Source: Laetmonice hystrix (Eukaryota). Taken from it: a DNA stretch of 64,000 bases. The translations under genes were made by a program, and so were the position numbers. Location of the stretch: positions 16,678,001-16,742,000 of the forward strand of contig OZ249442.1 in the NCBI GenBank assembly GCA_965235115.1. The letters run 5' to 3'. Under the pieces are notes generated by a model. It was not told where the DNA came from, ran no database searches, and worked only from the letters and a program-made list of their open reading frames with translations. Positions 27,601 through 48,373 of this stretch are shown here, piece by piece. How positions within the stretch are numbered: position 1 is the first letter of the stretch; every line of letters starts with the position of its first letter.

Positions 27601-30600
27601 GCTACGTATGTAGATATGTAGATTTAAAAAGGAAAAAAAAATCATTATTGCGAATGGCTGGTCGTGATGTTACTGTCACAGATAAAAGGGAGAGCCTCGT
27701 TGTGAAGTTCTTGAACTCTTGAACTCATTCCTATCGTCTCGAAAATAAAGGCACCCCAAATACATCTGATTAACATTATTTGTTGGCGCCACTAAGCCTC
27801 CTTTGCTTTATGCTGAGTCTCTTTCTTCTACAATGTTTTAATCATATTTATATTCAATAAAACTTTTATTGTTGTTGAAGATAACGTGGGGTTTCTGTTT
27901 ACCGTTGAGAGACATATTTTTTAAAACTGCCCCCTCGTCCTGAAAGTGTTATCAATAGGGTAAGGCTGTCTGTTTATGATCAGGGTCGGAACAGTAAGGC
28001 TATCGAGGTAATAACCCGTAACCGGGAGTTCTTCACCTGGGAGGTGGCCTTCCTCGGCGTCCGCTCGGAAGTCCTCCCAGACCGCATGAGGGCCACTTTC
28101 TGTGACCTTCTCATAGGTAAGCATAGGTCTTTATATACCTGTCTGGTTATCTTCGAAACACTTGTGAAACAGGTCTTTATGTACCTGTCTGGTTATCTTA
28201 GAAACATCTGTAAACAGGTCTTTATATACCTGTCTGGTTATCTTAGAAACATCTGTAAAACAGGTCTTTATATACCTGTCTGGTTATCTTAGAAACACTT
28301 GTGAAACAGGTCTTTATGTACCTGTCTGGTTATCTTAGAAACACTTGTGAAACAGGTCTTTATATACCTGTCTGGTTATCTTAGAAACACTTGTGAAACA
28401 GGTCTTTATGTACCTGTCTGGTTATCTTAGAAACATCTGTAAAACAGGTCTTTATATACCTGTCTGGTTATCTTAGAAACACCTATAAAACAGGTCTTTA
28501 TGTACCTGTCTGGTTATCTTAGAAACATCTGTAAAACAGGTCTTTATATACCTGTCTGGTTATCTTCGAAACACTTGTGAAACAGGTCTTTATGTACCTG
28601 TCTGGTTATCTTAGAAACATCTGTAAACAGGTCTTTATATACCTGTCTGGTTATCTTAGAAACATCTGTAAAACAGGTCTTTATATACCTGTCTGGTTAT
28701 CTTCGAAACACTTGTGAAACAGGTCTTTATGTACCTGTCTGGTTATCTTAGAAACATCTGTAAAACAGGTCTTTATATACCTGTCTGGTTATCTTAGAAA
28801 CACCTATAAAACAAGTCTTTATATACCTGTCTGGTTATCTTAGAAACACTTGTGAAACAGGTCTTTATATACGTGTCTGGTTATCTTAGAAACACCTATA
28901 AAACAGGTCTTTATGTACCTGTCTGGTTATCTTAGAAACACTTGAAACACAGGTCTTTATATACCTGTCTGGTTATCTTAGAAACACTTGTGAAACAGGT
29001 CTTTATACCTGTCTGGTTATCTTAGAAACACTTGTGAAACAGGTCTCTATATACCTGTCTGGTTATCTGGTTGCCGCACCAAACTGATTCTTTGGATTCA
29101 TGGAAAAAGGAGGGCACAGGTCACTGCTGGGTTACCAGCCCCATCAAACGTACCGAGTCAATATAGGCCTATAATCTCTCTCCCCCGCCAGGTCTGTTTG
29201 TGGATGTCGGTGACAACTATTCCATCATCGAGGTTGCCTCCAATAACTTTGTCTATGACGAGGTGTACGTGGATGAGAGCGGCACCAGGGCGAGCGATAA
29301 CGTGAGTCTGAGCTAACTTAAACGGGGTTCTCCAAATATTTCTATCATACGGGTTTCCTTCTCTCAATGGGATACAAAGCTTCTCTTATTAGTATAATTC
29401 ACTATGTAAAGTATACTGAGATGTGTTACCTTTGTGTACAGGTGCCCCATGATCTCGACTCGCACTTCCCCATGATGCGGGTTTGGCTGTTTGAGTTCTT
29501 CGACCGACACCGGTGCCTGGCCGCGTCAGAACCTAGCAGGAACATCCTCATAAAAGAGGTACGGAACCTAGGCCGCATCCAATTAGGGGTTAATATGGAA
29601 TATTAGACATATTCCTATACACTTTCCCCATTCCTGTGCTGCCAGGTCCTGCGGCTAGTGACAACCTTCATCAAGTATGGCTTCTTCGGCTCAACCCGGG
29701 AGATGGACGCCATCATAACTCCGGTCATCCACCTCATAGACGGCCACAGGGATGTCCCCTTCCCACCGGACAAGGGCACAGGTAGGCTCCAGGGATGTCC
29801 CCTTCCCACCGGACAAGGGCACATGTAGGCTCCAGGGATGTCCCCTTCCCACCGGACAAGGGCACAGGTAGGCTCCAGGGATGTCCCCTTCCCACCGGAC
29901 AAGGGCACATGTAGGCTCCAGGGATGTCCCCTTCCCACCGGACAAGGGCACAGGTAGGCTCCAGGGATGTCCCCTTCCCACCGGACAAGGGCACAGGTAG
30001 GCTCCAGGGATGTCCCCTTCCCACCGGACAAGGGCACATGTAGGCTCCAGGGATGTCCCCTTCCCACCGGACAAGGGCACAGGTAGGCTCCAGGGATGTC
30101 CCCTTCCCACCGGACAAGGGCACATGTAGGCTCCAGGGATGTCCCCTTCCCACCGGACAAGGGCACAGGTAGGCTCCAGGGATGTCCCCTTCCCACCGGA
30201 CAAGGGCACAGGTAGGCTCCAGGGGTGTCCCCTTCCCACCGGACAAGGGCACAGGTAGGCCACAGGGATGTCCCCTTCCCACCGGACAGGCGCACACTGA
30301 CAGGTATAGGCTCCAGGAATGCCTTCTTCCCACCGGATTAGGGCACAGGTATAGGTCACAAGGATGCCCCCTTCACACCGGACAAGGGCACAGGTATAGG
30401 TCACAAGGATGCCCCCTTCCCACCGGACAAGGGCACAGGTATAGGTCACAAGGATGCCCCCTTCCCACCGGACAAGGGCACAGGTATAGGTCACAAGGAT
30501 GCCCCCTTCACACCGGACAAGGGCACAGGTATAGGTCACAAGGATGCCCCCTTCACACCGGACAAGGGCACAGGCGGGCTCCAGGGGTGTCCCCTTCCCA

Positions 30601-33600
30601 TCGGATTTAGACTACAGGGGTATCCCCTTCCCCCCACCAAGGGCACAGGTAGGCCATAGTGATACATATCCCCCTACCTGACGGGTTTCTAGGCCACAGC
30701 TGGGCCCAGTTGGATAAAAGATTTCAAGTCCACTCTAAAAGCATTTTTTGTATCTGTCCTCATGATGTTTCAGACTATTCGAATGAGCAGAAGGTCATCG
30801 TGAGCGAGTGGAGAAAGGCAGAGAGGTACAAGCCTGGCCCAAACACAGCCGCCATGATCGAGGCCAAGATCAGGTACGAGAGAAAGACACCATTCTCATG
30901 GGCAAAATGTGGGGCACGCAGAGATGTCAAGAAAAGGGAGCTGAAACACAGAAAATATAACTTTACGTTAATGAGGGGATAAAGTAGATTTTGGAGGTGC
31001 CTTCATGTTCAAGGCGATACCAACGCCACCTACGGGAGATAGACCCCTATTTGTTGGTATGTTTATCAGGAAAAACCTTCCTGCTAAAAAGTAAACTTTG
31101 TACTATTCTGCTGTTTTTCAGAGGACTGGATTTGATTGACCTGCTACTTGTGAAAGAATTCAACCTAAACATCCGGGTAAGAGAAAATCAAAAATCGTTC
31201 TGACTTTCGTATAGCTAACACTATTCACCGGTAAATAGGTGCTACACTACGATATATCGATACGAATGTCAAAATATCGATGCAAATCGATACACACAAG
31301 AGCCATCATAAGGGTAGCTATACCAACGAGGCCTTCCTTCCACGTTAAGAAAAAAACATTTACTTAATTCACATTGCCAAGAAGCATATCAATAAAGAAT
31401 CACGTTTTAAAAATCAAGGGCTGTAAGTATATCGTTTCACGCTTCATTACTAAAAAAATCAATAAATCTATTTAATATTTTCAGTGAAATATTGTAAGTT
31501 GGGAAAACTTCATATTTCAGTACTTTGTATCGGTCTTCAAAGATCTCGAGCAGCGCGAACTGCAAGGCAAGAAAAGACGGAAAAAGCTCGGTCGGCTTCT
31601 ATACAACTCATTCGACACCAATACGATATGGTAGGTTCTAGCTTGTTTAAAACTTCTTAAATATTCTGTATGTTACATCATTTTTAATCTTTCTGCCACT
31701 TATGTAGGTGCTTCGAGCCAGTATTGTACATGCAGAGGTTATTCAGATCTGATTTAGAAACGAGAGCAAGCTTGTATTTCATGTCGTTTGGCTTTGTGAC
31801 ATCAGGAAGAGCTCGAAACTCCGAAAACGGATCTACGCCTTCCTGGCAGTCATGGAGAAGGCGGAAGTGATCAATTCGACTCTCACAGATATACTCTTCG
31901 TAAGTCATGCTGTCTCAGTTTTCAAATGTTTATGTATTGCGACAGTTCACGTTAATCACTAAATGCATGTCAAAGCCATGATAACATAATGTTCTGCCAT
32001 CACTATATGGGTGATACTATGCAAAAAAAAAAAAATTGCCACGCACTAGCAATTTTTAAAAAGGCTCTGTCCTTTGACTTGAGAATGGCAGGCAAATTAC
32101 CAGCTGTATACAATATATTCTAGTACTTAACGGCCTTAGATGAAGCAGTTTAAATTTTTACTGACACATCATTGATAGACGTTGACATTTCAGGATCTGA
32201 CGAAATACAAGTCGGATGAAATGATCAGGAAAACGTTGTCCATACTTAACAAGATATTTTCCATGAAATCCGAGTTATTTCGGGTAGCGGAGAGGACTCA
32301 GGTGAGTCTATGATCCTCCTATCGTCATCAGGTCCCAGTTCGTAACAAAGATCTTGCTTGAACTTGAGCTTAACGCTTCTGATTGGCTGGTCTGCTTAGA
32401 CCAGCCAATCAGAAGTCTGCATGTGTACACGTATGTCTGCCAGCATGTGCTGAAGTACTCATGTCTGCCGACAGGTGCTGAAGTCTGTTCAGTCTGTACG
32501 GGTCCACCGGGACGCTCTGCGGAGTATGGTTGTCCTTACTCGGCTCAGTAAGAGTAAACTCAGTGAGGAAACAGTCCGCGAAATGGTCGCCATCCTCGAC
32601 AACTTCACCGAGTACGCTGGTTGATTCCTATTTATGTAAACTTAGGGCACACTACATATCAAAATTTTATTTTGAGGAAGTGAAATATAGACATTATGTC
32701 ACAATTGGGTTTCGTATCTTTCTTCAGATTATGTCACGTTCCACACAAACCACACCTTTCACATCCCGTTGGCCAAAACATCCTTCTAAATAATGGTCAG
32801 TACATTACCGAGGTATAGTAGGCCAAGTAGTATCATTTTCACAGACCGTCTCTATATTATCATAGAATGTTAAACTCAGTGTCCTTTATTTATATGTCAG
32901 AGATCTTTGTCGCCCATTGGCAAATGATCTATTAGTCATGACCAATTATTTCCATTAAAGGTTTGTTGGGCCTCCTTCTACCGTTGGTGACGCAAGAGGT
33001 TGACACAAACCTACAGGTAAAGTTATCCCCTTCCACGGTGATGGTGGTTAAGTACCCCCTGTCGTAGACCCCATCATGGCCCACTCAAGGAAGACAGGGA
33101 CGTCTTCATATTTCTCCAACATATTCGATCGACTCTACCCTCAGCGTTTTTGGATTTTAAACCCGGAACTCCCAACAGTCCCCTTTTGATCATTTAAAAT
33201 ATTTTTACAAGTATTTGAGGCTGGTAATTCCCCTTCCTCTTTGCTGTAACGTGTGTTTGGGGACCTGCTCCCATCCCCTATGATGTATCATTTCCCCTGT
33301 CAATGCTGTCCCCAGGATCAGTGTGTTTGGGGACCTGCTCCCATCCCCTATGATGTATCATTTCCCCTGTCAATGCTGTCCCCAGGATCAGTGTGTTTGG
33401 GGACCTGCTCCCATCCCCTATGATGTATAATTTCCTCTGTCAATGCTGTCCCCAGGATCAGTGTGTTTGGGGACCTGCTCCCATCCCCTATGATGTATAA
33501 TTTCCTCTGTCAATGCTGTCCCCAGGATCAGTGTGTTTGGGGACCTGCTCCCATCCCCTATGATGTATCATTTCCTCTGTCAATGCTGTCCCCAGGATCA

Positions 33601-36600
33601 GTTCGCCATCTCGGAGAGGGTGATTGGGACGGGACTCAGGCTGCTACGGTTTCTTACCCAGCATAACGGCTTCGTCCAGGAGTTTCTCATGGATCGCATC
33701 GAGGAGCTGCTCAGTGTACAGTGCTGTGGGGCCGAGCAGGCTTTGGCCTTGCACGAGGTACACTGCTCAGTGGCGGGAGTAGTAGGGAGGCGGACCGGCA
33801 CCCAGTAATTTATGACAATTTATGACAATTTATGCATATATTTGCGTAAAGTATCACAAATACCTGGGGTGCCGGTCAGCCTCCCTACTACTGGCGGTTT
33901 AAGGAATGTTTTAAGGGGTAGGGGAGCCAACCATCGAGAAAAACTCACGGCCCTCGAAATAGGGGATTTCTCCATCCTAATTATAGCATCACCCGGATTA
34001 AATGGATCCTCCCGTGAGTGAGGGGTTGGAGCTGGGGAGGCCCTGGGAGTTGGACATTTGCCGTGCAGCCATAATTTTCGTTTGATGTAAACCTTTTTTT
34101 CAAATATATATACAACCATTATGGACGTTGAGGCTGTCAATAGACAGAGAGGACGCTTGTATACAGTCTCTGTGTTACTACCAGGTGTTCCGGGGGAAGA
34201 CAGTTCATTGTCTCCGACTACAGCCACAACACATCCAGAAGATCGTCAGGCTGGCGGGACATTACCAACAACGGGCGCCACAGTTTCTCCAGGTCGGTTT
34301 CTGACTGACTCAGCCAAACATTCTGGTTTTTCCTGATGTATTTTCATTTTGTTCACATGAAATATATTTGGCATGTTTTCTTGGTTATATCTACGTATTT
34401 CGCCTATTTCTCCGCATGGGCTCCGTAGTTATAGTGTAACCACAATATGCTCCAAAACATCCAAAGTAAAGGCTGACCACACTAATTGCGCGGTCTCCTG
34501 ACGGAATATGTTGTATAGTTACTCATGGGTGTGATGAAAATGGACGTGACGGGAACGCTGCTGAAACGTAACCAGCACCTTGTGACAAAAAACATCATGG
34601 AAAATTACAAGTCTGTGGCCTACGTCATGAACATGGAGCCAATGCACAGGTCAGTACTCAAAACCTGTTCACGTAAAAAAGTACATGAATTATATTCATC
34701 AATCAACCACCGAATGCTATAGGCCGACTTGCATTTTAGTCGCTATGCCAAAGAATAAAAACACGCAACGGGATGAGGGTCCTTGACTAAGAGAAAGTAT
34801 GGAATTCGATGCCGGGCGCATGAATACGGCACGATATCGACTTTCCCGGGTCAAGGAGCCGAATGCCTTTACGTGTTTATTATATACGCTTGGATTATCT
34901 TTAATTTGAGGAAAACAATAATCAACGACAAATTTCCGCATTTATTAACTTTTATCTATACATGTATTTTATCCGCGGGGCCACGGGACGGGGCGGTTTG
35001 TTAAGTGGATACCCTCCCCCCATTTTTTCTACACGGTGCTTACAAAGTGGTAGCAAACCGAGGGGGTGGGGCCTGGTATTGGAACAGTCTAGCGTAATTT
35101 AATAATACACCGTATGACCCCCCCCCCCCCCCCTGAATGGTACTGGCAGATAGAATGCGCATATAATAACTGGCATAATGCTATATTCTGATAGTGGTAT
35201 TGAAATGTGAATAGTAAAATGTATCTCCTTGGCGTGTGAATTGATTCAGGCTTCGAGTAATAATCGGCAGTGAGGGACCCGAGCATCAGACCTACTATGG
35301 GTTTCTGGTTGCCCTCTTGGCAACCTGTGCAGAGGTAGGCGTTGCTTCTGTTGTTGTTGATGTGATTGTTGCCGTCGCTACAGCTGCTGCGGCTGCTGCT
35401 GAGCTGGTGCTGCTACTGCTGCTCTCTGCTATGTTATGATATAAAATAATGAGGTGACCCAAATGATTTCATTCAGATTGTCGTTATATTAGGTTTGTCG
35501 CGTTTCGATACCACATAAACAGTGGCGGCTCCAGCCCGTTTTAGTTGGGGGGGGGGGGCTCTGGGGTGGCTATAAAATTTGAAGGGAAGGCTAGGACATG
35601 ATGAGATACGGGCATGTTCCTTTTGTTGGTCAATAATGTTGGGGGGCCAGGGGGTGCTTAGGGGTGGCTAGAGAAAGTTTTGCAAGCCCCTCCCTGGCGC
35701 CGCCACTGTACATAAGTTTCTTCGCTCTCCCAGTAGATTTTACCCTAATTGTAAATCTGTCATTAAAACATTTTCGGATTTCCATGTCACCCGTGCCACA
35801 GGTGGACATGTCGCATTTAGATGTTTTTTTTTAATCATTTCTATACAGGTGACAATTAATTACACAGTTCCATAAAAGATAGGCCCGTATCCTTGGTTAC
35901 TTTCCCCATTGTTACCTTATATTTGGCTGTGTGCCTGTTGATTATAGGGTGAGAGTCAATACGTGGAGAGTCTGTGTCAGACGCTCATGTCACTCGACGA
36001 ACTCTTCCTGGTTCTCAACAATCGTAATGTGGCTATCGGCCACAAGGTGGCGTTCGCGCGGTACCTGGTGTGGGCTTACATGCGGACAGGTCGTAGCGCT
36101 GTGGAGAGCGGTGTCGATGAGCTCTCACACGATGAGTAGGCCTACGTTCTCTAGCTTATTAGCTTAGGACATTAGAACTGGATTGAATAGGAGGAGGATA
36201 TAATGTAAAGGGCAAGTCCCTTCTTGGAAAGGGTCAGTGATCGAAAGGTCAAGGGTGAACTCTGGCCCGTTATATCTACGTTCAAGTTAGTTCAAAATGA
36301 AAAGAGGATATAGTCCAGTTGAGTTTTTGTTAGTTGTAAAAAGCATACATCGCTACTATTTTTAGGGGCGGTTCCAGCAATTTAGAATAGGATAAACAGA
36401 AAATTCGACCCAAGGTGGGACAGCGAGGTTGACCTTGGATGACCCTGGTTTGATTGTGTTGTCTGAAGTGTTCAGTAATTTAAGAAAAGGTTTCTGGTTT
36501 TGCAGCATGATGTGGAAGCATATCAGGATCATCTGGACACTTCTCCGAAAACATAACACCGGGCATGCTGATGTAGACAAAGTCAAGCCCAGCGAGGGGC

Positions 36601-39600
36601 ATAGTCGGTAAGAAAATCTTCCTACATGCAGAACACTCAAAGCTTGCTCAACAGAGACGTTTCGGTCTCTATGCGGAGACCAGGCACATAACCATATTAA
36701 ATCGTTCAGTTATATTAAAGGTATTAACCCCTTGATCTTTCCTTCAAAAAAGTGATTTATGTTTTTCATACTCTTTTATATCTGGAGAACCTCCGATTTT
36801 TATCCACCTTCGCAGCATTTGGTCAGAATGTCTAAAACGAACCATGTTAGCTGATGTTTTCCTTTATGCGGCCAGCGTGAAACATCACGAAGTCGGACAG
36901 TGTGCAACTAAAAAAATGAACTGAGCCCCCCTCGCTCCTCCTAATGTATGTTAAAACCGCCACATTGAAATGACCTCGGGTATTCCTGTCCATAGGCTCG
37001 ACATTGAAGACACCACAGACAGTCCTGCTTCAAACGACACTGACTCCCTCGCCTTGTACATGCTGCGTGCTGGGTTCTTGGTCCTACAGGTAGATATATA
37101 TATAAATCTCTGTGTTCAGCTCGTTACCGCCACATTCAGGAAACCTGCATTGGGAAACTTTATAGGCAATTGACGTTGTTCAGCAAACCTTTTGGGTTTT
37201 TTTTGCTTATTCTGCAAAAAGGAATGGAACGTAAATTTCGGGAAAACGTGGAGAATTATCATCGAGTCACTGATGATAGCATTGATTTCTTTCAGTCATT
37301 CTTTGATAAGTTTTATAAACCGAACAAAGATATCTACCCTGAGGAGATCGAAACGCTGAACCGTTTGGCGACCGTCATCATCGTAAGTATCACGTGACAC
37401 CAGGAAATTGATGTCCCCAACCGGAAATATGAAGTTCGCACAGTTCTGCTAAAAAACAATTCAAAAGCAAAGGCCGCCATAATATGCCAGTCTGGATCGT
37501 TCAATGGATCTTTTTTTGTAAAATTAACGTTCCAAAGTATTTAAATAGACCGAAAGACCGAATAGACAACACTATCTTTATCACCAAAGGCATGAAACCT
37601 ATATGGATCTTTTTAAATGACAGCCATTTGCGGAGACAGCGGGGCACTCCGCAGAAAATCACGGCCAACTCCAGGGGATGGTAGCGTGTATGGACACGCT
37701 CTTCCGTCGACTACATTTGTCTAAGTCGGTAAGTTGTTTTCACTTGGTAGATGTAACAAATGGTTGCCACCATAGGGTTATACACATTGATAAGGGTTCC
37801 AGTTACATGCAAAATGTATGGAGAATATGATTATCCCATTTCGATGTAAAACTAAATTAAAATATCTCATGAAAGATCATCTTTATCTAATGCATGTACT
37901 CTTTTTTTCCACCCATCCCTGACTGATGAAAGGTTCTTGAAAATGTCTTCGATAGCGCCCGGTTCTATTCAACCTTAAGTGCATTGGGCTCCACGTTAGA
38001 TTCTGCGGTAGGTGTGCCGCTTCCGAGAAGTTTCAAGGAAGCTTTAATTTCAACAGTGCATGGCCAATTCATGAATAGAAAACACAACAAACATGTAATG
38101 TTTAAAAACTCTATATTAATTTTAAAAGGGCCCGTTACTTAAAAAGATATTCGTTTTTAGCCCTTAGAGCAGCAGGATCCATATGAACTCGAACTGAACG
38201 AGAAGTTGCATAATTTCGGGTACCAGATTGCAAGATTTCTTGAAGGCAGAAACACGATATGCGCCCAACTCGGAGGGAAAACTCATGGCAACGAAAGGCG
38301 TAAGTCATGTATTTTTGTATTGCCTTCCAACTTATTTTTTCCTCATTATATTGATTTCCAACTTATCTTTCCAATTTTGTATTGATTTCCAGCTTATCTT
38401 TCCAATTTTGTATTGATTTCCAACTTATCTTTCTAATTTTGTATTGATTTCCCACATATCTTTCCAATTGTATATTGATTTCCAGCTTATCTTCCAAGCG
38501 ACCTAGAAGTGAAGTTCCCGCAGGGTGTCGAGTTCCAGACCCATGTGCAATCCTTTGGTAACTGTCGTGGTAAAGCCATCATTGACAACCGAGCCTACAA
38601 ACTCATCGATCAGCTCGAGTAAGTAAACGTCACGTCACCAGTAGCAACCGTACTGCCGGTTTACTATACGGAGGGGAATTTGTTTTCTTATTTAGAGGCG
38701 AAATTTTATTCTATTCAACGAAATAAAAATTTAAAACGGTATTCATTGGGGGGGGGGGGGGGGTAGTGAAAGAGAATCGTTATGGAACAGTAATTGTCGT
38801 ATGGGGATTTTAATTCCCCAAATGAAGTACCGCTGACCGCCCGATTTCTCGTCTCTGTAGAATCTCCGCCCGTAAATTGGCAAAGAGACAAACCGTTGTA
38901 GACGACACGTTAGACATCCGCTGTCTGCAGATCCTACGGGCTCTCATGTATAATCTCATCGTTCAACTTCCGGAGAACTGGGGCGAAGATGTTTCCAAAC
39001 ACCAACGGTAACAGCCAGCTTTCCTTCCTATACTTTGAGATATAGAGTGCGGTCGATGTAACGGGTGCTATTTTATCATTGACTGCGAAGTCTGATTTTC
39101 TGCTGATAGTTTGAACTATGTAGAACAATTTTACGCCGTGTTTAGTGTTTCATCGTGTTTATGGTGACAGGATACTTGACGACGTGAAACAGCTCCAGGA
39201 CATGATGGTTGAGTATGATGTGGTGAGAAAGGTCCTACCATTACTGGAGAGGATTAACTTGGCCGTTGGTCTCCAGGTTCTTAGCTTCATAGACCTTCTT
39301 CTTTTCAACGCCAACAGAAATGGACAGGTCGGTCAATGAGCTCTAATTCTGTCTGTTGCATTGCTTTGTTTGCTTGTAATTGGTTGTCGTTTGTATTTTT
39401 ACGGAGTTACGTACTACAGAAGTGGCATTGTTCATGCAGTAAACGTCAGTTTCTTCTTTATGTTTCTCGTTAATCGTAGGAGGCCATGCTGCGATATTTC
39501 AAAGCCACGGCAGAGGAGGTGTTCTTCTTGTTCCTGCGTGCCCGGATACATGACGCTGTCACCGCCGCCAAGGAGAGGTTCGTATGTCTGCTCTATACTG

Positions 39601-42600
39601 ACCACATTCTGGCTAATATTCTCGTTTGTGACTGAAGGGAGAAATGAGATACACATTTTCCAGCATACAGTGTCCAAGAGAGCACGCCAGCATACGCCAT
39701 CTGAGGAATTAGGAAATGTAAGGCGGACAGCCTATATTACTTCATGATAATCGTCTGAAATTAAGAACCTGTTGATCCATATGAATAGTCTAATGTAAAA
39801 ACATGCTTGCCCGGGAAGATAATAACATTCAGAGCTCGTATGAAAGGTTTCAGGCGTGTCTAATCATCATTCAAACAATTTTTATTAAACACAGGAGGTC
39901 CATAGAGTTACAGAAGAAAGAAATGGCAAAACTTGAGAACAAGACTGGAAAAAATACGACCAGCCTGGAGAACGAGTCTTCACATACGACCTCTTCGCCA
40001 GGACAGGTAGCTGTGATACACATAGCAAAACTAAAGGCAGCTAGGTCGGTCGTTTTCCCCAGGAACTCCAGTTCTATCCACCAGTTAATCTTACCGTCAC
40101 TGAATCATTTAAACCGATTCGATCCAAATCTGAAAAAAAGGAAAATGCTCCTTTTGCAGGATTCTTTAGCACTAAGTTTTGTAGATATAACATATGAAAT
40201 ATTTACAGAAACACGGGAATTGGAACCTGGATAGAAAAGCAAGAAAGAAAAAAAGCCTAGCACCCTTCTTCCATCGAATGGTTCATAACCGGCTGCTGGT
40301 GGCAAGGGCGCCCAGCGAACGCCTGGAAGAGGTGAGGTATATTAGAGGCAACCCCTTTTTATCCCTAGTTATAGGAACTGGTTAATAAGATATGAGAAAT
40401 ATATCCATAACAGTACCCCCCAAGAAACAACTAAGGTCTAAATCAATACCCCAAAAGCAATGCATGGAGGTGTTTGGAAACAGTCACCAATGTTGACCGA
40501 ATTAGAAAGATTAAGCACTTTCTGGGGGGGGGGGTCGCTCAATTATTCCCGGGCTACAGTGTGGAGAGAGGCACTCCTCCAGTAATCAGGAAAACATGCC
40601 TGGTTGTTGAAATATTATTATTGGTATGCCATCAGGTCGAGGTCGAGTTGGTTACGTCACCCCTGAAGCCCGCCGTCGTCGAGGACGACGTGTCTCCATT
40701 AAACGGAAGCCAGGACGGATCCTCGGCTGTTCTCGCTCTCCGAGTCATGGCGAGACTTTGTGACGGACAGTACAGTATGGCGCAGGTACAGAGCTAAATG
40801 TCCCCGGAAACAAAATTATCCCTGTCAGTGTTCTTTGTTGTTGCTGATTTGTTCTTGTATGGGCGACATGGCACATGTTCACTGACTTTTGTGAATATAT
40901 TAACATATTTACTGCCTATCAAGACCAACAAAGGTAGTTTTATCAGATGTTCCAAGCGTTTCGTATTCTCTTTGACAGACATATCTACGAACTCAGCCAG
41001 ACAACCCTATTTCCGTCAATCTAGTCGCCGAATTGATTCGTTTTCTTGGCACTCTCTATACGCACGTCCGAGGGGACAGCATCGGTTTGGCTTGTCAAAT
41101 CTTCTCCACCATCAACGAAATCTGCCAGGTAATGTAAAGTCAAACAAATCAGGGTTATACGATAACGTATAGAGCGTAGCGTGATTCGATGATTTGGGAG
41201 ATGGAAGACGCGGTGAGCCAGCCGTCTAGCGACCACATGATGAATACCATTTGAGAACATCGGATATGACAAAGGGATGACGAATTCCCATCCCATATAT
41301 TGCTGTATGATATTGCCTCTACTACAAGTGAACGCAGCCTGTTATATCATTTTGTCTGTCCGTCTTAAGGTGTCCCATCCTTTCGCCAATATTAATTTTC
41401 TGCCCCAATGCGTTGAACTGCTATTGGTCGTCTATTGTGTTTTGGAGATTCCAAACGGCTCCAATATACGACTCCAAAGGCATGGGGTCACATGCCAAAA
41501 TTACTGCAAGATTGCAGCTTCCTTTAAGCCCCAATTTAGGATAGTACTGTGTTGTGCTTTAAGGGTGGTGAGCTACTCTTTGCAATATGAACTAACTATA
41601 TCGCGGTTTTTGGTGTTTGTAGGTAACTAGGTCAGTTGTTTTAATTTCCAGGGCGTCCAGGAAAACCGTGCTGTGGCATTAAACAACAAAATCATCGACT
41701 ACATCAATTTCATCTTCCGAATGCCCTCGTTCCCAGATTGTGAGCCAGAAGAGGTAGGTAGGCTACCGGAGCAGGTAAAATTCCAATGCCACAAGCGTCG
41801 GGAAGTCAGAATGACCCAGTTAGGGCGCTATTTACCATGAAAGTAGACATATCTATTAAAAGGGACAAAGCAAATATTCGTTTTTGACAGGTGATTGAAC
41901 TAAAGACGGAAATGGGGAACATCCTGGTGTCTCTCATCGAGGAAAACGACGTAGCGTCGCTGCAACTCGCCAAGGTAAGCCAGCGGACAGGGGATTGGCA
42001 AAACGTAGGTCCGACTTGTATTGCACTTAATTTATCAAAATGTCAAAAAAAAAATCAAACTCTGAAGGTTAAGCATCGAGCAAGTCCTCTTTTGTCAGCT
42101 CTCTATTTTGCCCCCCCCCCCCAAAAAAAAAATTCAATTTCCCTTTCCTGAACGTTATCCTGAACGTTATAGACTCTAATGAACATCCATTGAAAGTCGG
42201 CCGACCATAATCCATTACTGTTTACTGTAGTGTATACATGTATACATGTGTCTGACAAGTGGGCCTCTTTTGTCACTATCAGGAGATTCGTGACACGGTG
42301 GACACGAAAGCCCTGGTTGGACACTTGGTGATGGTCCACAGCTTGGTCACAGTAAGGGTCGTCACATAGGACATAGACATTTCACATATTATCGCCCAGT
42401 AATGTTAAAAATACCATCGTATCAATTGTATAAAATTCTCATTTAAGGATTAAAAAACTCCTTCGGTCTTCACAGTAGTTATTTTGGTTTTCGTCCGAAA
42501 AAATAGAAACTGTATAGGTTTGTCTCTAGTTTAGGCCTACTTGAAAATAGGATGAACACGTGACTCCCGGTGAGGATAGTGGTTTGAAATATGTTTTTTT

Positions 42601-45600
42601 GATGTTGCGAAGACATTTGTCTAGGATTGCGAATCATAGTGATTTCTATAATGAATTCTTTGTTTGCAGGGAGGAAGAGCTGACCCCATTCGATTGATAT
42701 GTGGAATCAACTCGACGGAACCGACCGAATCAAAAACAGGAATCTTCTCAAATAAAGTACGTCTCTGTTATCTTAGTTATGGACGGTTCATATATCGCAT
42801 TGCTAATCAACATTAAAAGAGACAGAAATAAAACTTAGTGAACGTTTGTCCTGACATTTTGGAATCCTTTATTTTAGGCGGACATAGACAAAGACTTGTT
42901 TGAAAGCGTCAACAGCTTTGGCTTCCTGTGTTACATCATATTGGCGCGGCTCTTCGATATCGACAGAAAACTGGAGAAGGAAGGTATAGAAAACAACAAA
43001 AGGATAGTTCCACTTTAGACCAAATCAAGAATAGTACGATCTAACTTAAATGGACTCAAAAGTTTTATGAGTTTGGCATTCTTATTTCCTTGTACCAAGA
43101 CAACTCAACTAGGCCTACAGTACAGTACCTTTCATCCGCCGGCAAATGTTGCAAAATAAACCCTCTACTCAGATCTGGGCCCAGCATATCGAAAATTCTC
43201 AACTTGCGTAAAGCTTACTTAAGTAAACAACAGTCTTCTGATTGGCTGGTAAGCTTTACTCAAGTTGACAATTGTCATTACTTGCACTGTTAAATAACGT
43301 CAACCGGTTTCCTTTTCTAACATCATGCGCATGTCTCCCTCATCTTAACTCTCCAGTATTGAAGACGCCAAAAGACAGAATAGCCTTCCGTCACTTCCGG
43401 GACCAGTGTATGTCTGTTGAGGTCATTAAGGACGAATGTATACAGAAGGTTCATTTCCGGGTCAAAGAAAGAGTAGGTTGAATTGTCATTAATTCCGTAA
43501 CAAGGCATCAACAAACTAAGCAGGCTAGAATAAACAATATCACCTGAGATTCATTAGAAGCCTAATTAAGGGTTTGCTATCCACTCAGTTAACTCCCATC
43601 CCTTCATTGGACCCGCCCCTGCTTCACTCCAGCTAAGGGATGACACAGTACATCATCTCCAGAATTTGTGAGTTAATGACAAACGTTTTCTCCTGGGTTT
43701 CCGTTAAATTTTCTCTGGGGTCTCCTCTTCCAGGACCTGCTCCGCGAGGAGGTAAAGGAGGAAGTCAAGTGGAACATTGACCGTACCTCTCCGTCCAACA
43801 AACTGCGTGCCCTGCTCGCCTGGACTAAAGACATTCTCAAGGACATCAGTTATCAGAAGAGAATTCTAAGCAACCCTTTCCCCAAACAGTTAGCCAAGAG
43901 ATGGTGTGTAGCGTTTGCAAGAAGAGTTTTTTTTAAATGGTAACAGGGCGTCGGAAGCGGGATAAGACCAATAATTAGGCCAACTGTTGGCTATGATGAG
44001 GTCATGTTGGCTATTGTTCATGCTGTTTACATGGGTACGTGCCCTAATATATGTGCGTCTCCGTTTCGAACAAACATGCTTATTTTTTATGAAACCGTTT
44101 TCACGTCTCCATTTCCCTATATTTCCATTTCTTGATCGTTTTTTAACTGATTGAATTTGGAAAAGATGGGGAAGCTGACGACTTCAGTTGCATGATGTAT
44201 AGGAAAACTGAATACGATAATGGATGATTGGATCCGCATAACCTGGAAAAGGCCAATGGGGCATAGTATAAAAACACATGGAAACGGCACTTTAACATAC
44301 ATTTCAAGATATGGAACATATGCAGTTGATACGTAATTTCCTGAACTGCTTTGGTTCCATTGAACATAATGTTGAACGGTATACTTTACAACTTTACAGG
44401 GCCATCTGGAACTACGCGTGCATCCTACTGTCCCTGCTCATCCAAGTGATGATGCTCGCCACGTGGTATGCCCCGATGTACTACGCCGACATTCCCACGA
44501 ACGCCACCCAGTTACCACCACAAATGACGCAGTGAGTTGCAAATTCAGTCTTTAGGCGTCATCTGTGACGTCCATGAACGTTGACAGAGCGGTGGGGCGC
44601 CCGGAACCCCATTACCACCTCACTGTCTGTGGATCATGCCCTGATGACGGTCTCCAGGCTCTGAGAGCAGTATTTATGTTTCTGAGATAGAGAGAGACAG
44701 TCAGAGCGAGACAGAGAGAGACAGAAAGAGAGGCAGGGAGAGAGGAGAAGAGAAATGTTAGACCTAAAAAGATCCCTTTCCGGCACGCGAACCTACCTAT
44801 AAAACTGACTGGAGGAAGGAATATCACACATTGTAACCTTAAGTCATTGCTTAAAAATATCTTTACAGACAGACGCCGCGCATTGAGTGGGACTTATTCC
44901 AACTCGTACTTTGGATCGTTGGGGCGTGCCATAACCTCTGTTCGCTCATGTTGTTTATATCCTATCTCCTCCTGAGGCACCCGGCACTTCCCAACGTATC
45001 TGGATTGGGGGACAAGCTACGGTATGTAAATCTAATCTAGCATTAAAAAAAACAACTTAAAAAGAGGTTGATAGAATTATCTACATCAATATCATCTTCT
45101 TTTTTGGGAGGGGTGTTACAAATTGATCAGTGTACTTCTTGTATTTGTGTATAGCAAGTTATGTAAAACGACGACGGAGGAGGAAGATGACCCAGCGCTA
45201 GCAGGTCCTGTCGCCAAAACCGTCAACTCCCGTCTTCAGGCCAAATTGTTCAGCGCCACTACTCTCTACTACTTGGTGCGCACAGTTGGCTTTCTTTCCA
45301 TTCGTCTCTTCACGTATTGTCCCATACAATGACCCTTTCTCTATCCTTTCCCACACCCGCTCCGTTTTCTTGGCACCGATAGGGTTGTCAGGCGTTGTCA
45401 GGCAGCTCAAGAATTGCAGGGTGAGGACACAGTACGCTAAAAGCATGACGATACCGCCTCATGTCGGCGCTCTTTCTCTCTCTGTCCACAGTTACTCATG
45501 GCTCTCTCATTTGCTGGGACATTCTTCTACGGATATTTCTTTGCCTTTCATCTGGTAAACATCGTTGCCAATAATGAGCTGTTGAAGGGCGTGATCAAGG

Positions 45601-48373
45601 CGATTACTCAGAATGGTAACACACGTCGCTAAGCGATCTTTGTAGTTTTTGTTTTAAAAGATTTGTTATGTGAAAATGTGGTACAATGTATATACATGTA
45701 ATTCATGGTAACTTAAAACCCAGGAAAATTTGGTCGGAAGTAAATATCTATCCGAGCCTAACCTTATCCCTAACCCCTAACACCGGTCCCTAGACCTCCG
45801 AAAACATATCCCTCTCCCTCTCCCTGACTCAACCCTAACCCAAACGTTTCGTGGCGAAGTTACCATGAATTAATAAAGGAAAATGTGAGTACCACTGAAT
45901 GAGCTTTAAAACGCTAAAAATGAAAATTCCAATTGCATATTGCATGGCTCTATTTAGTTGAAGGTTTGGAACCTTATGCGCCTTAAAGTAACTGCTATTA
46001 CCTTACACATTGTTTTTTAAGGTAAAACATGTCCCGCTAGTTTCTGACGCCTCTAAATGTTGATTACACATTGAACCACCCGCAGGTAAGTCGCTGCTGT
46101 GGGTGATGATAATGGGGCTGATTATCATTTACTTGTACGGCTTGATCGGGTTTGCCTTCCTGCGCCCAATCTTCAATCCAGAGGAGGAGCTTTACTGTAA
46201 CAGTCTGGCCCAGTGCATCGTGACTGTTCTACGGTACGGAGTCGTCGGAGGAATCTCCGAGGTAGGTTGGCCCCCATAATCAGGGCCGGATCCAGGGGGG
46301 GCGTGGGGGGCGTACGCCCCCCTATTTTTGGCAGAGTAATGATTTTTTAGACTGGAATTTTACCAGTATCTTTGCCCCCTGACAGTTCTTTTCTCAGATG
46401 CCGGGAAAATGCATCTGACAAACATGAATTTTCAAATTTTTCGGGGGGAGGTCCCCCAGACCCCCCCTTGGGCTTTGCGCCTTCGGCGCTCGCAATCTTC
46501 TCCAGGGGCTACGCCCCCCCTTTCTAAGAATCCTGGATCCGGCCCTGATAATAGAACGTGTTTAACATTTATAGAAAATACTTAAGTAATGAATGAATGG
46601 ATTGATTAATTAAAAGACGGGTGAAAAGATAAATATTTCTTCCAAAAGGTTTTGAGTAATCGTGTTTCTGCTAGAAGACGACTCATGTATATGTAAGCAC
46701 CTGTCGGTAGTGTCTTGCTAAATGTAGTAAAATTTTGTTATTTAATTCAGAAAATAGTGACTTGTAAGCCCAAGAGGGCTGGGTGAGACTTGTATAGTAC
46801 AATGTTCTGAGAGCGACAGTATACGACAACCTATCTATCTATCTGTATGGTAAGAAACTGTTTGTGGTCCTCCACAGACCTTCAGGATGCACGATCTTCA
46901 GAAAAACTTCCAGACGTTTGGGATGATGACGGTCTATCAACTGACGTTCTTCATTCTCTTCACGACAATCGGTCTCAATATAATCTTTGGTATCATCGTG
47001 GACACCTTCTCCGAGCTGAGGGACCTCAAGGTTTGTCACATGGAGCGATTAAAGCTTTTAGCACGTAAACTGTTCAAAATGTAGACTTTATTCTGAATCA
47101 TACCATGCCTGTTACTGTATACTGACCAATGTTTGTTTTTTCAGTGGATGGCCGAGAAGGACATGAGAGACACATGTTTCATCTGTAGTCGGGACAGCTA
47201 CGATTTTGAACATGAAGGCCTGGTACTTCTGAAACATATTTTTTACAGAAGTCTGTGGAGAACTGGTGTTGTTTTAAAGGGGCATGATATACAAATGTAT
47301 TTATAGACGTACACAAACTATTTATAGATGTTCGTCACAGGCTCCAGCGAGCATTTATTATGTGTTCATTTATTATGTGGCAGGGGTTCATCTACCACGT
47401 ACAACAGGAGCACAATATGTGGGCTTACGTCTTCTACTTTCTCTACCTAAGTCAAGTCAAGCCCAACGATTACACATCAATTGAAAAACACGTGGCCACC
47501 CTGGTAGGATATGAGTAAATGTATTACATTTCGTGGGAGCAACTTATTACCTCGGATTAATTATTTTGAAAGATGGCACATCAGAGTTCTCTGTAGGGTG
47601 TTGTCTCGTAAAATGAACGTTCGTAAAAGGGGGGGGATTAAAAGTTGTGTGAGTCAAACCCCCACCCTGTCCGTCCACGCCCCAATACAAAAAAAAACGG
47701 AACTACGAGCTCTTCCAGAAGAAGTCGGAATATACATGTAAAAAAATTCTCTTATTTGCAGTTGAAGCGGAAGAACTTTTCCACTTGAATACCGAATGGT
47801 ACATTTTGCTATAGGTCTATACTATAAATTCACCCCTTACCTTCTAGTTGAAGCAGGACAAGCTGGACTTCTTTCCACTAAATCGAGCGCTGTGTCTATC
47901 GTATGTCAATGACAGTAGTCAGGACTCACAACTCAACAACCTCATGCAAACTTTGCAGGCCATTAAGTCCAAACAGGACGAGGACGTAAGTCAAAACTTA
48001 GATACATTTGAGGTTGTTTTGCTGATGTGCGAGTAAACTACTGGGCTAGCCTCTAGCTCAGAACACTCAACATGTGATTAATGATTCTTTAATGCCGGGA
48101 CCTGTGAACCATTAAAGAGGATTGTTTTTAAAACAAGCATTCCCAGAGATCCATCAAATCGACGTCATCTCTTTTCGAACAGTTGACAGTCGGAAGGAGG
48201 TAATCTTCAGAAATTTTCTCTCTCGACTGCAGGAGCAGAGAAGAAGCCGCGAGGCCGAGCGACAACGTCAGGCAGTGTGGCAGGAACAGTTCCGGTTCCT
48301 CCACAAAACGCGCTCGTCCTCCCTGAGAACCGAAGACGCGTTGAGCAGCCACGACGGCGAGTCAACAGCCTAG
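12645..48373 (+). CDS. ITPR: Inositol 1,4,5-trisphosphate receptor-like Ca2+-release channel (divergent ITPR/RyR superfamily member), 68 coding exons, 7659 nt, ~2552 aa
   Basis: Manual splice, all GT-AG, phases continuous from ATG to TAG. Exons: 12645-12727,13792-13865,16291-16415,16603-16689,18557-18634,18978-19058,19260-19357,19849-19936,20351-20438,20765-21018,21562-21646,22946-23031,24310-24435,24743-24796,25053-25133,25940-26014,26310-26423,26621-26743,26882-26986,27175-27285,27528-27605,27984-28116,29192-29301,29442-29558,29646-29781,30774-30873,31122-31176,31521-31630,31806-31899,32194-32301,32475-32611,32728-32795,32961-33016,33596-33757,34185-34292,34519-34649,35250-35334,35948-36135,36506-36607,36996-37089,37296-37382,37624-37728,38161-38299,38486-38618,38861-39007,39171-39327,39480-39577,39895-40006,40209-40331,40636-40785,40979-41128,41652-41753,41891-41974,42283-42351,42670-42756,42878-42983,43357-43472,43734-43903,44400-44531,44869-45021,45155-45275,45492-45615,46086-46261,46878-47030,47145-47222,47384-47503,47848-47985,48233-48373. 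Hallmarks: N-terminal MCMGDFICLY and QNRYK (suppressor domain); MIR motifs VVRLFHKDLEAFL and IRFRHMTTRRYL; KDRQKLLR; RIH/armadillo LATCAEGE and NEICQG; S6 LNIIFGIIVDTFSELRD; C2H2 zinc motif CFIC...HVQQEHNMWAY; C-terminal coiled coil. Confidence 0.93.
13012..13149. other. Assembly gap (138 N) in ITPR-like intron 1
   Basis: Run of N. Confidence 1.
14016..14965. mobile_element. PIF/Harbinger-type MITE with inverted arrays of 21-nt subterminal repeats
   Basis: TAA|GGGCCATGGC...AAAAAAAATCACAAAAAAGT(C/A)TAACCCGTAC termini ending GCCATGGCCC|TAA, i.e. a 3-bp TAA TSD. Internal ACCCGTACGTACGACTTAGTA repeats switch orientation at a hairpin centre near 14723. Confidence 0.8.
14058..14504. mobile_element. 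Nested 447-bp MITE with CAG(G/T)GGCGGATCCAG-type TIRs and a 5-bp TSD
   Basis: CCGTA|CAGGGGCGGATCCAG ... CTGGATCCGCCAGTG|CCGTA, inserted into the first 21-nt repeat of the outer element. Confidence 0.8.
17041..18544. repeat. Minisatellite, 46-nt unit (50 nt where CATG is duplicated), ~32 copies, ITPR-like intron 4
   Basis: Unit AGAGACACTCTCTGGCAGCACCACCAGTGTCCTCATGATTTACGTT, head-to-tail with no spacers; ends 12 nt before the exon 5 acceptor. Confidence 0.97.
18668..18881. mobile_element. Degenerate MITE of the CAGTGG..GATCCAG family
   Basis: CAGTGGACGATCCAGG ... CTGGATCCCCCAGTA, flanked on both sides by TGATGA. Confidence 0.5.
23300..23910 (-). mobile_element. Decayed non-LTR retrotransposon (CR1/L2-group-like) reverse transcriptase fragment
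   Basis: Across frameshifts and stops the minus strand gives ILPLLSKLLEK...YQFGF*ASHSTELAL, GIFLDFSKAFDTVN..LLNKLYHYGIRG, TGVPQGLILGPLMFLICID and LIMFADNS, which are LINE RT motifs. Confidence 0.88.
28130..29070. repeat. Minisatellite, ~44-46-nt unit, ~20 copies, ITPR-like intron 22
   Basis: Unit TACCTGTCTGGTTATCTTAGAAACACTTGTGAAACAGGTCTTTATA with variants; starts ~15 nt after the donor at 28117. Confidence 0.97.
29747..30600. repeat. Minisatellite (12 x 43 nt plus ~7 diverged ~45-nt units) made from the 3' end of exon 25 and its donor site
   Basis: Unit CAGGGATGTCCCCTTCCCACCGGACAAGGGCACA(G/T)GTAGGCTC; unit 1 overlaps the coding sequence and the real donor at 29782. Confidence 0.96.
33252..33601. 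repeat. Tandem repeat 5 x 70 nt containing the exon 34 acceptor site
   Basis: Unit TGTGTTTGGGGACCTGCTCCCATCCCCTATGATGTATCATTTCCCCTGTCAATGCTGTCCCCAG|GATCAG; the last copy holds the functional acceptor (exon starts at 33596). Confidence 0.97.
35519..35709. mobile_element. MITE with ACAGTGGCGG TIRs
   Basis: ACATAA|ACAGTGGCGGCTCCAG ... CTGGCGCCGCCACTGT|ACATAA (direct-repeat flanks). Confidence 0.65.
38349..38498. repeat. 31-nt tandem repeat x~5 overlapping the exon 44 acceptor
   Basis: Unit TATTGATTTCCA(A/G)CTTATCTTTCCAATTTTG; the last copy supplies ttccag|CTTATC (exon starts at 38486). Confidence 0.9.
45701..45870. mobile_element. 170-bp MITE with 14-bp TIR, TA flanks and internal CCCTAACC motifs
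   Basis: TA|ATTCATGGTAACTT ... AAGTTACCATGAAT|TA; internal CCTAACC/CCCTAACCC motifs. Confidence 0.6.
46281..46547. mobile_element. 267-bp MITE with perfect 15-bp TIR and 5-bp TSD
   Basis: ATAAT|CAGGGCCGGATCCAG ... CTGGATCCGGCCCTG|ATAAT; inserted 19 nt after the pore-exon donor. Confidence 0.85.

What the first reader, a model, noticed from the sequence alone, without database searches (positions are those of the whole stretch)
46232..46261. Non-canonical selectivity filter RYGVVGGISE
Seen: pore helix and loop QCIVTVLRYGVVGGISETF, between intact S5 and S6. Established: ITPRs have LRSGGGVGD and RyRs VRAGGGIGD, and these Gly and Asp residues set Ca2+ permeation. Here the best match is VGGISE with a 2-residue insertion (or GVVGGI without one). 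Inference: ion selectivity or conductance differs from canonical channels, although all other channel hallmarks (S6, zinc finger) are intact, which argues against a pseudogene.
Basis: partly seen in the sequence, partly recalled or inferred. Interest (0 to 1): 0.7.

Follow-up and report, generated by a model that had tools for sequence, protein, structure and literature searches.

The report
Divergent pore loop in IP3R-like channel
The odd pore motif is real, but it belongs to a large, little-studied sister family of the IP3 receptor in which a shortened, non-canonical pore loop is the rule; this gene's own change is the loss of one acidic residue in that loop.

Summary
Exon 46086-46261 (+) encodes S5, the pore helix and ...CIVTVLRYGVVGGISE. 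It ends at a strong donor (GAG|GTAGGT) and joins in frame to the S6 exon at 46878. Genomic contigs from three runs agree; no RNA run exists.

The gene (about 12.6-48 kb) is not the canonical IP3 receptor. That gene lies elsewhere in this genome (C13) and has GGGIGD. The window's gene belongs to a large clade found in choanoflagellates, sponges, Trichoplax, hemichordates, molluscs, annelids and others. I think this is the "IP3R-B" family of Alzayady 2015, but I could not read that paper.

Early branches of the clade keep GLLSGGGLGE. Trichoplax and bilaterians have a loop two residues shorter, usually GLIGD[LM]F[DE].

The gene-specific change is Asp to Gly at loop position 5. The genome has at least nine such paralogues. 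The window's five-gene subclade has G, N, D, K or Q at this position, and its loop evolves faster than its flanks. One orthologue fragment from another assembly keeps RYGVVGGISE exactly, which is weak support.

Most likely this is a working low-charge pore subunit. Its function is untested.

The parts
12645..47994 (+). IP3R-like gene (non-canonical, B-type clade); about 43 homology-supported exon segments
   Evidence: Colinear tblastn matches to full-length homologues from 12645 to 47994. Single exons hit Pfam MIR and RIH_assoc above the curated cut-off.
45492..45617 (+). S4-S5 region exon (...FAFHLVNIVANNELLKGVIKAITQNG); the 5' boundary was not refined
   Evidence: 74% identical to a mollusc homologue; conserved in all paralogues.
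46086..46261 (+). Exon encoding S5, a short luminal linker, the pore helix and the 8-residue pore loop
   Evidence: The exon end is at the same position in homologues of many phyla, whose gene fragments read on into the intron as V = GTn.
46238..46261 (+). Pore loop GVVGGISE (family norm GLIGD[LM]F[DE]; canonical GLR[SN]GGG[VI]GD)
   Evidence: MAFFT alignments with intermediate forms from sponges and Trichoplax.
46250..46252 (+). Codon GGA = Gly at loop position 5. This is the gene-specific change, where 41 of 54 distinct family loops with Gly at position 4 have Asp or Glu.
   Evidence: Paralogue L015 has GVVGDISE.
46259..46261 (+). Codon GAG = terminal Glu of the loop, aligned with the Asp of canonical GGGxGD
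   Evidence: Position 8 is acidic in 46 of 54 distinct family loops with Gly at position 4.
46262..46877 (+). Intron between the pore exon and the S6 exon; holds a MITE (46276-46552) and a second polymorphic insert (46667-46843)
46878..47030 (+). S6 exon (TFRMHDLQKNF...TTIGLNIIFGIIVDTFSELRDLK)
   Evidence: Aligns to S6 of IP3R1-3 structures at E about 1e-5; Pfam Ion_trans, below the cut-off.
47145..47222 (+). Exon with the C-x2-C half of the C-terminal zinc finger (WMAEKDMRDTCFICSRDSYDFEHEGL)
47384..47506 (+). Exon with the H-x4-H half of the zinc finger (GFIYHVQQEHNMW...)
47848..47988 (+). C-terminal exon (LKQDKLDFFPLNRALCLS...)

Best explanation
The exon encodes the pore of an intact, selectively maintained paralogue of the non-canonical IP3R-like family (B-type). 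It is most likely a subunit of a tetrameric intracellular cation channel.

In this family the canonical 10-residue loop (GLRxGGGxGD) lost two residues before Trichoplax and bilaterians diverged. In most bilaterians it became GLIGD[LM]F[DE], with two acidic residues per subunit. The window's gene sits in an annelid-type expansion and has replaced the inner Asp with Gly (GVVGGISE). It keeps only the outer Glu, which aligns with Asp2551 of IP3R1 and Asp4899 of RyR1.

Inferred: the pore still conducts cations but carries half the fixed negative charge of its relatives. It should therefore hold divalent ions less tightly, giving a different Ca2+/K+ selectivity, conductance or divalent block. It may act alone or mixed with Asp-bearing paralogues.

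Shown: anatomy, family placement, loop homology, and conservation in one orthologue. Not shown: expression, channel activity, gating ligand.
For: - Exon structure and sequence. DNA reads agree.
- Family: 335 proteins at E<=0.001 (78 at E<=1e-10) for the exon, nearly all of the listed matches with non-canonical loops that end at the same exon boundary. Named full-length homologues come from molluscs, annelids, brachiopod, nemerteans, flatworm, hemichordates, amphioxus, Trichoplax, sponges and Salpingoeca.
- Loop series and the 2-residue deletion.
- Tree with loop columns removed: the B-type clade is separate from canonical IP3R (100/99*) and from this genome's own RyR (SH-aLRT 99). The 8-residue-loop clade has 99/95*. 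The window lies in a starred 5-gene subclade.
- The canonical IP3R (GGGIGD) and RyR (GGGIGDE) exist elsewhere in the same genome, so this gene is an extra channel type.
- The window's terminal branch is 0.089 against 0.48 for its sister paralogue.
- An orthologue fragment from another assembly is 88% identical over the exon, with RYGVVGGISE and the exon end unchanged.
- Literature: GGGXGD lies in or near the filter, and its Asp supplies fixed negative charge that concentrates divalent ions (PMC2995152). The equivalent Asp in IP3R2/IP3R1 is implicated in ion selectivity (PMC13503717).
Against: - No RNA evidence exists for this gene.
- No member of the animal B-type clade has been recorded, to my knowledge. 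From memory, the Capsaspora B-type protein did not release Ca2+ in response to IP3 (Alzayady 2015, not readable here).
- In canonical IP3Rs, changing a filter Gly gives a dead pore (PMC7939385). A loop this different could therefore mean a different pore architecture or no conduction at all.
- Within the 5-gene subclade the loop is only 40% identical against 69% for its flanks. In the mainline genes across phyla the figures are 86% against 71%. This fits relaxed constraint as well as it fits specialisation.
- Conservation of 10 residues in one orthologue at 12% divergence would happen by chance about 28% of the time.
Confidence: 0.6

Rival explanations
1. Relaxed constraint. After lineage-specific duplication the pore loop of this subclade drifts, and position 5 no longer matters. 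The Gly is a neutral variant with no distinct permeation, or the subunit is a redundant or regulatory partner that contributes little to the pore.
For: Position 5 is G, N, D, K or Q in the five genes of the subclade. Their loops are 40% identical against 69% for the flanks. Other family members also lack an acid at this position: Lingula GLIGAIFD and Owenia GLTGILFE.
Against: The terminal acidic residue is kept in all five genes. The window's gene has a very short branch, 0.089. Its loop is unchanged in the one orthologue found. The pore helix and S6 stay highly conserved.
Confidence: 0.28
2. The B-type proteins, this one included, are not ion-conducting channels of the IP3R/RyR kind. The reshaped loop closes or re-purposes the pore, and the protein acts as a scaffold or sensor.
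For: Single Gly substitutions in the canonical GGGXG give dead pores (PMC7939385). From memory, the Capsaspora B-type protein gave no IP3-evoked Ca2+ release.
Against: S5, the pore helix, S6 and the zinc finger are conserved across phyla, and in the mainline genes the loop itself is more conserved than its flanks. That is hard to explain without a pore function. From memory of canonical structures, the S6 gate residues also appear kept (LNIIFGIIVDTF against LNLIFGVIIDTF).
Confidence: 0.08
3. Pseudogene, or a wrong exon: the real mRNA uses another exon that supplies a canonical filter.
For: No RNA data are available to confirm splicing.
Against: No canonical-loop coding potential exists between the neighbouring exons. 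Donor and acceptor are consensus-like. The exon boundary is shared across phyla. About 43 colinear homologous exon segments were found, with no stop inside any recognised exon. An orthologue keeps the exon.
Confidence: 0.04

Closest known systems
Non-canonical IP3R-like family, probably the 'IP3R-B' family of Alzayady et al. 2015 (Mol Biol Evol 32:2236; recalled from memory, paper not held). NCBI names the animal members 'ITPR1/2/3-like'.
   Same: Placed inside this clade by the tree. Shares the 8-residue loop, the exon boundary right after the loop, the S6 motif TTIGLNIIFGIIVDTFSELRD, a short S5-pore linker and the domain set (MIR, RIH_assoc, Ins145_P3_rec, Ion_trans).
   Different: Loop position 5 is Gly instead of the family's Asp or Glu, and positions 2-3 are VV instead of LI. 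It belongs to a lineage-specific five-gene subclade whose loops vary.
Canonical IP3 receptors (ITPR1-3; the invertebrate single IP3R)
   Same: Overall architecture. S6 aligns to residues 2510-2549 of IP3R2. C-terminal zinc finger and IP3R-like C-terminal tail. Alpha-domain basic residues equivalent to R506, K508, R511 and K569 are kept.
   Different: Loop GVVGGISE against GLR[SN]GGG[VI]GD. About 50 residues of the luminal S5-pore loop are missing. Only 39% identity to this genome's own canonical IP3R over the channel region. Separate clade. Y567->S, R504->K and R568->K in the ligand site.
Ryanodine receptors
   Same: Same superfamily, with a short S5-pore linker.
   Different: RyR has GGGIGDE. 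This genome's own RyR (C3:20.62 Mb) keeps that motif and falls outside the B-type clade.

Membership tests
Canonical IP3 receptor (IP3R-A / ITPR type) | GGGXGD pore-loop motif | tested here: not met
   The loop is GVVGGISE, two residues shorter. The motif is defined in PMC2995152 and PMC3194816.
Canonical IP3 receptor (IP3R-A / ITPR type) | Groups with canonical IP3Rs in a tree of the channel domain | tested here: not met
   This genome's canonical gene (L022, GGGIGD) and two canonical-loop proteins lie across a 100/99* branch from the clade that holds the window's gene.
Canonical IP3 receptor (IP3R-A / ITPR type) | IP3-coordinating residues of the binding core (R265, T266, T267, G268, R269, R504, K508, R511, Y567, R568, K569 of IP3R1; list recalled from memory) | tested here: inconclusive
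   Read through the P0161-to-IP3R1 HMMER alignment and MAFFT. K508, R511, R506 and K569 are kept; R504->K, R568->K and Y567->S. The beta-domain stretch (LRIRER against LRTTGR) cannot be aligned with confidence, and single-exon searches failed.
Canonical IP3 receptor (IP3R-A / ITPR type) | Domain architecture: N-terminal Ins145_P3_rec/MIR, RIH, RIH_assoc, six-TM channel, C-terminal zinc finger | tested here: met
   MIR and RIH_assoc above the cut-off; Ins145_P3_rec and Ion_trans weak on single exons. Homologues carry all five Pfam families. C-x2-C...H-x4-H is read directly from the sequence.
Ryanodine receptor | GGGIGDE loop and RyR-specific TM region (RR_TM4-6) | tested here: not met
   PF06459 hits only C3:20.63 Mb in this genome. 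That gene has GGGIG|DEIE and lies outside the B-type clade.
Non-canonical IP3R-like (B-type) clade | Placement inside the clade; shared 8-residue loop; shared exon end after the loop; S6 motif ...TTIGLNIIFGIIVDTFSELRD | tested here: met
Non-canonical IP3R-like (B-type) clade | Identity of this clade with the published 'IP3R-B' family (sister to RyR, lost in vertebrates) | not testable with these tools
   The paper is not in the library. Three clades without an outgroup cannot show which two are sisters. The taxon range (Salpingoeca, sponges, Trichoplax, Lottia, Saccoglossus; no vertebrate among the named full-length matches listed) fits my memory of the paper.
Functional ion channel | Expression and cation conduction | not testable with these tools

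The most novel reading that the evidence does not exclude
Trichoplax and bilaterian B-type IP3R-like proteins are a distinct class of intracellular channel with a shortened pore loop that puts an Asp inside the filter. The annelid-type expansion (at least nine paralogues here) makes subunits with two or three, one or no acidic residues at loop positions 5-8, or even a Lys at position 5. These could assemble alone or together to set Ca2+ against monovalent selectivity. The window's GGISE subunit would then be a conserved low-charge version, for example a poorly Ca2+-selective or counter-ion channel.
Probability: 0.2. Interest if true: 0.65.

Novelty: new member of a known kind. Interest (0 to 1): 0.4.

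Why it matters
IP3R and RyR pores are treated as defined by GGGXGD, even in protists (PMC3194816). Here a whole animal branch of the superfamily has replaced that motif with a shorter acidic loop that is then kept across phyla, and one worm lineage is varying it again. None of these channels appears to have been recorded. The window's gene and its Asp-bearing paralogue differ at one loop position, which gives a natural pair for testing what that Asp ring does. For genome annotation, these genes should not be named ITPR1/2/3-like as if they were IP3 receptors with the usual pore.

Tried and rejected
- RNA support: the look-up of sequencing runs found only three genomic runs of one sample. Read laying confirmed the DNA but cannot show splicing.
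- More orthologues: a word-index search with the window's exon gave one hit. Its DNA could not be fetched because the sample file is too large, so no dN/dS. The same search with the L015 paralogue's exon found nothing.
- IP3-site residues from single exons against solved structures: too weak or no hits. Replaced by a transitive alignment through P0161.
- P0138 and P0146, used as canonical-loop outgroups, lack the RTTGR, RQKLMR and YRKN motifs. They are not typical animal IP3Rs and are useless as ligand-site references.
- Alzayady 2015 could not be read by DOI or PMC id. Full-text searches for 'IP3R-B' found nothing about its pore.
- The organisms behind GCA_013332975.1 and the ENA assemblies could not be identified.
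- Tetramer model with pore radius: not run. No complex job was sent.
Full report
**Observation**

window:46232-46261 (+) reads CGG TAC GGA GTC GTC GGA GGA ATC TCC GAG, which translates to RYGVVGGISE. It closes exon 46086-46261. That exon begins after CCGCAG and encodes KSLLWVMIMGLIIIYLYGLIGFAFLRPIFNPEEELYCNSLAQCIVTVLRYGVVGGISE. The donor is GAG|GTAGGT. The next exon starts after CCACAG at 46878 in phase 0 (TFRMHDLQKNFQTFGMMTVYQLTFFILFTTIGLNIIFGIIVDTFSELRDLK).

Further exons give WMAEKDMRDTCFICSRDSYDFEHEGL (47145-47222), GFIYHVQQEHNMW... (47384-47506) and LKQDKLDFFPLNRALCLS... (47848-47988).

Contigs of three genomic runs of one sample cover the exon. They show one synonymous difference (46094) and none in the motif. 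No RNA run holds the locus, so the splice is supported only by consensus sites and by comparison with other genes. Between 45618 and 47145 no frame can encode a canonical loop.

**What the gene is**

Full-length homologues match colinearly from 12645 to 47994 in about 43 exon segments. No stop lies inside any recognised exon; a few of the matches cross stops where they run on into introns. Single exons reach Pfam's cut-off for MIR and RIH_assoc. The pore exon aligns to S5 and the pore helix of solved IP3R2 and IP3R3, and more weakly to RyR. About 50 residues of the canonical luminal loop are skipped (query 2-34 matches 2368-2400; query 34-55 matches 2452-2473). The S6 exon aligns to IP3R2 2510-2549 at E 8e-6.

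**Family**

An exhaustive search with the 58-aa exon found 335 proteins at E<=0.001, 78 of them at E<=1e-10. Nearly all of the best 150 carry non-canonical loops that end exactly where the window's exon ends. The many single-exon fragments read on as V..., which is the intron's GT.

Named full-length members come from molluscs, annelids (Owenia, Dimorphilus), Lingula, nemerteans, Macrostomum, hemichordates, amphioxus, Trichoplax, sponges and Salpingoeca rosetta. From memory this is the 'IP3R-B' family of Alzayady et al. 2015. The paper is not held, so that identity is a lead and not a test.

**Loop homology**

Aligned with MAFFT, the loops after the Gly that ends the pore helix are:

| Source | Loop |
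|---|---|
| Canonical IP3R of this genome | GLRNGGGIGD |
| RyR of this genome | GVRAGGGIGD |
| Choanoflagellates and sponges (B-type) | GLLSGGGLGE |
| Trichoplax | GFLSGFHE |
| Hemichordates | GLIDGLQE |
| Most lophotrochozoans | GLIGD[LM]F[DE] |
| The window | GVVGGISE |

The Trichoplax and bilaterian loops are therefore two residues shorter than the canonical loop. The sponge-to-Trichoplax comparison (...GLGEAL against ...FHEAL) ties the last acidic residue to the Asp of GGGxGD.

The total distance from the pore helix to S6 equals that of human IP3R3 (29 residues by my count), because the linker after the loop is two residues longer.

Read this way, the window's last five residues, GGISE, are closer to canonical GGIGD than the family norm GDLFE is.

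**Tree**

With the loop columns removed (210 columns, IQ-TREE):

- The B-type clade is split from the canonical-loop proteins at 100/99*.
- Adding this genome's RyR leaves a B-type clade of 62 rows at SH-aLRT 99.
- The 8-residue-loop sequences form a 99/95* clade.
- Lophotrochozoan genes fall into an 'H[HR]G...' group and an 'R[YF]G-LIGD' group.
- The window's gene lies in the second group, in a starred 5-row subclade: (window GVVGGISE + L017 GVVGNIAD, 99/96*) with (L015 GVVGDISE + (L001 GGAGKLTD + L002 GGTEQLPD)).
- The window's terminal branch is 0.089 against 0.48 for L017.

**This genome**

The S6 exon finds 11 S6-like exons in the 627-Mb assembly. Reading around them gives the following genes:

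| Place | Loop or note |
|---|---|
| Window (C7) | GVVGGISE |
| C1:38.57 Mb | GVVGDISE |
| C1:38.60 Mb | GVVGNIAD |
| C6:8.80 Mb | GMIGDIDE |
| C6:6.93 Mb | GLVGDYDE |
| C6:7.19 Mb | GLIGDIFE (mainline type, 83% identical to Owenia in the pore exon) |
| C6:8.99 Mb | GLLGELFE |
| C10:13.10 Mb | Two alternative pore exons and two alternative S6 exons |
| C10:6.78 Mb | GLIQGLYD |
| C13:4.59 Mb | Canonical IP3R, GLRNGGGIGD |
| C3:20.62 Mb | RyR |

The window's gene is therefore an additional channel type, not a damaged IP3 receptor. Earlier notes of this scan call the animal an annelid-like worm. The pairing of C6:7.19 Mb with Owenia and of C6:6.93 Mb with Dimorphilus in the tree fits that.

**How constrained is the loop?**

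Among 54 distinct family loops with Gly at position 4, position 5 is Asp in 35 and Glu in 6. Position 8 is acidic in 46.

Loop identity compared with flank identity:

| Set | Loop | Flanks |
|---|---|---|
| Mainline genes across phyla | 86% | 71% |
| The 5-gene subclade | 40% | 69% |

The loop is under strong constraint in the mainline gene. It is either relaxed or diversifying in the expansion that holds the window's gene. All five genes of the subclade keep the terminal acid.

One orthologue-like fragment from another assembly (P0272, ENA ERZ26222911) is 88% identical over the exon. It keeps RYGVVGGISE and the exon end. At 12% divergence, ten unchanged residues are expected by chance about 28% of the time, so this is supportive but weak. 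Its DNA could not be fetched, and the L015 exon found no orthologue.

**Mechanism**

Established knowledge:

- GGGXGD lies in or near the filter. Its Asp (plus a Glu in RyR) gives fixed negative charge that concentrates divalent ions and shapes conductance (PMC2995152).
- The equivalent Asp (D2502 of IP3R2, D2551 of IP3R1) is implicated in ion selectivity (PMC13503717).
- A Gly-to-Ser change inside GGGXG kills the IP3R2 pore (PMC7939385).

Inference: the B-type loop is a different filter design. Most family members carry two acidic residues per subunit, while the window's protein keeps only the outer Glu and has Gly-Gly before Ile. I expect a cation-conducting pore with lower fixed charge than its paralogues, and so weaker divalent binding. 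Mixed tetramers with Asp-bearing paralogues could grade this. None of this is measured.

**Gating ligand**

A transitive alignment (window to P0161 by MAFFT; P0161 to IP3R1 by HMMER) shows that the alpha-domain basic residues are largely kept. KDRQKLLRN corresponds to NRERQKLMRE 503-512, and SKKN corresponds to YRKN 567-570. The changes are R504K, R568K and Y567S. The beta-domain stretch cannot be aligned safely. Whether IP3 is the ligand stays open.

**Verdict**

The motif is real and the gene looks functional. The finding is best described as a lineage-specific member of a known but unstudied IP3R-like family whose non-canonical loop is a family trait. The gene's own novelty is one residue, Asp to Gly. 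Interest is moderate.

Noticed in passing
window:46276-46552: MITE-like element in the intron after the pore exon. It has 21-nt terminal inverted repeats (46276-46296 and 46532-46552). Read depth over it reaches about 58,000. Some contigs join 46275 directly to 46548, so the insertion is polymorphic.
   Followed up: partly
window:46667-46843: A 177-bp stretch is skipped by contigs in all three runs (joint 46666->46844), while a repeat of about 450x depth maps there. This is a second polymorphic repeat insertion in the same intron.
   Followed up: no
G000:C10:13101686-13103691 (-), loci L010/L011/L020: A paralogue has two tandem S5-pore exons (ending HRGLIVGTYE and RRGLIDGLFN) followed by two tandem S6 exons. 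These are candidate mutually exclusive exons that would swap the whole pore module of one channel gene.
   Followed up: partly
G000:C6:8984500-8994400 (-), locus L019; also L017 and L016: More than 20 tandem 83-bp copies of the 3' end of the S4-S5 exon (TFHLLNIVHNSNLLQRVIRAVTQNG plus a donor) lie before the pore exon. Smaller arrays occur in two other paralogues.
   Followed up: no
L001:10927-11157 and L002:10581-10796: In the related genes of two compact assemblies (ENA ERZ21781341 and GCA_013332975.1) the S6 and zinc-finger exons are fused (intron loss). Their pore loops are GGAGKLTD and GGTEQLPD, so one has a Lys where the family has Asp.
   Followed up: partly
G000, whole genome: At least nine B-type IP3R-like genes, plus one canonical IP3R and one RyR. 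Four of the B-type genes lie on C6 and two are close neighbours on opposite strands of C1 (38.57 and 38.60 Mb).
   Followed up: partly
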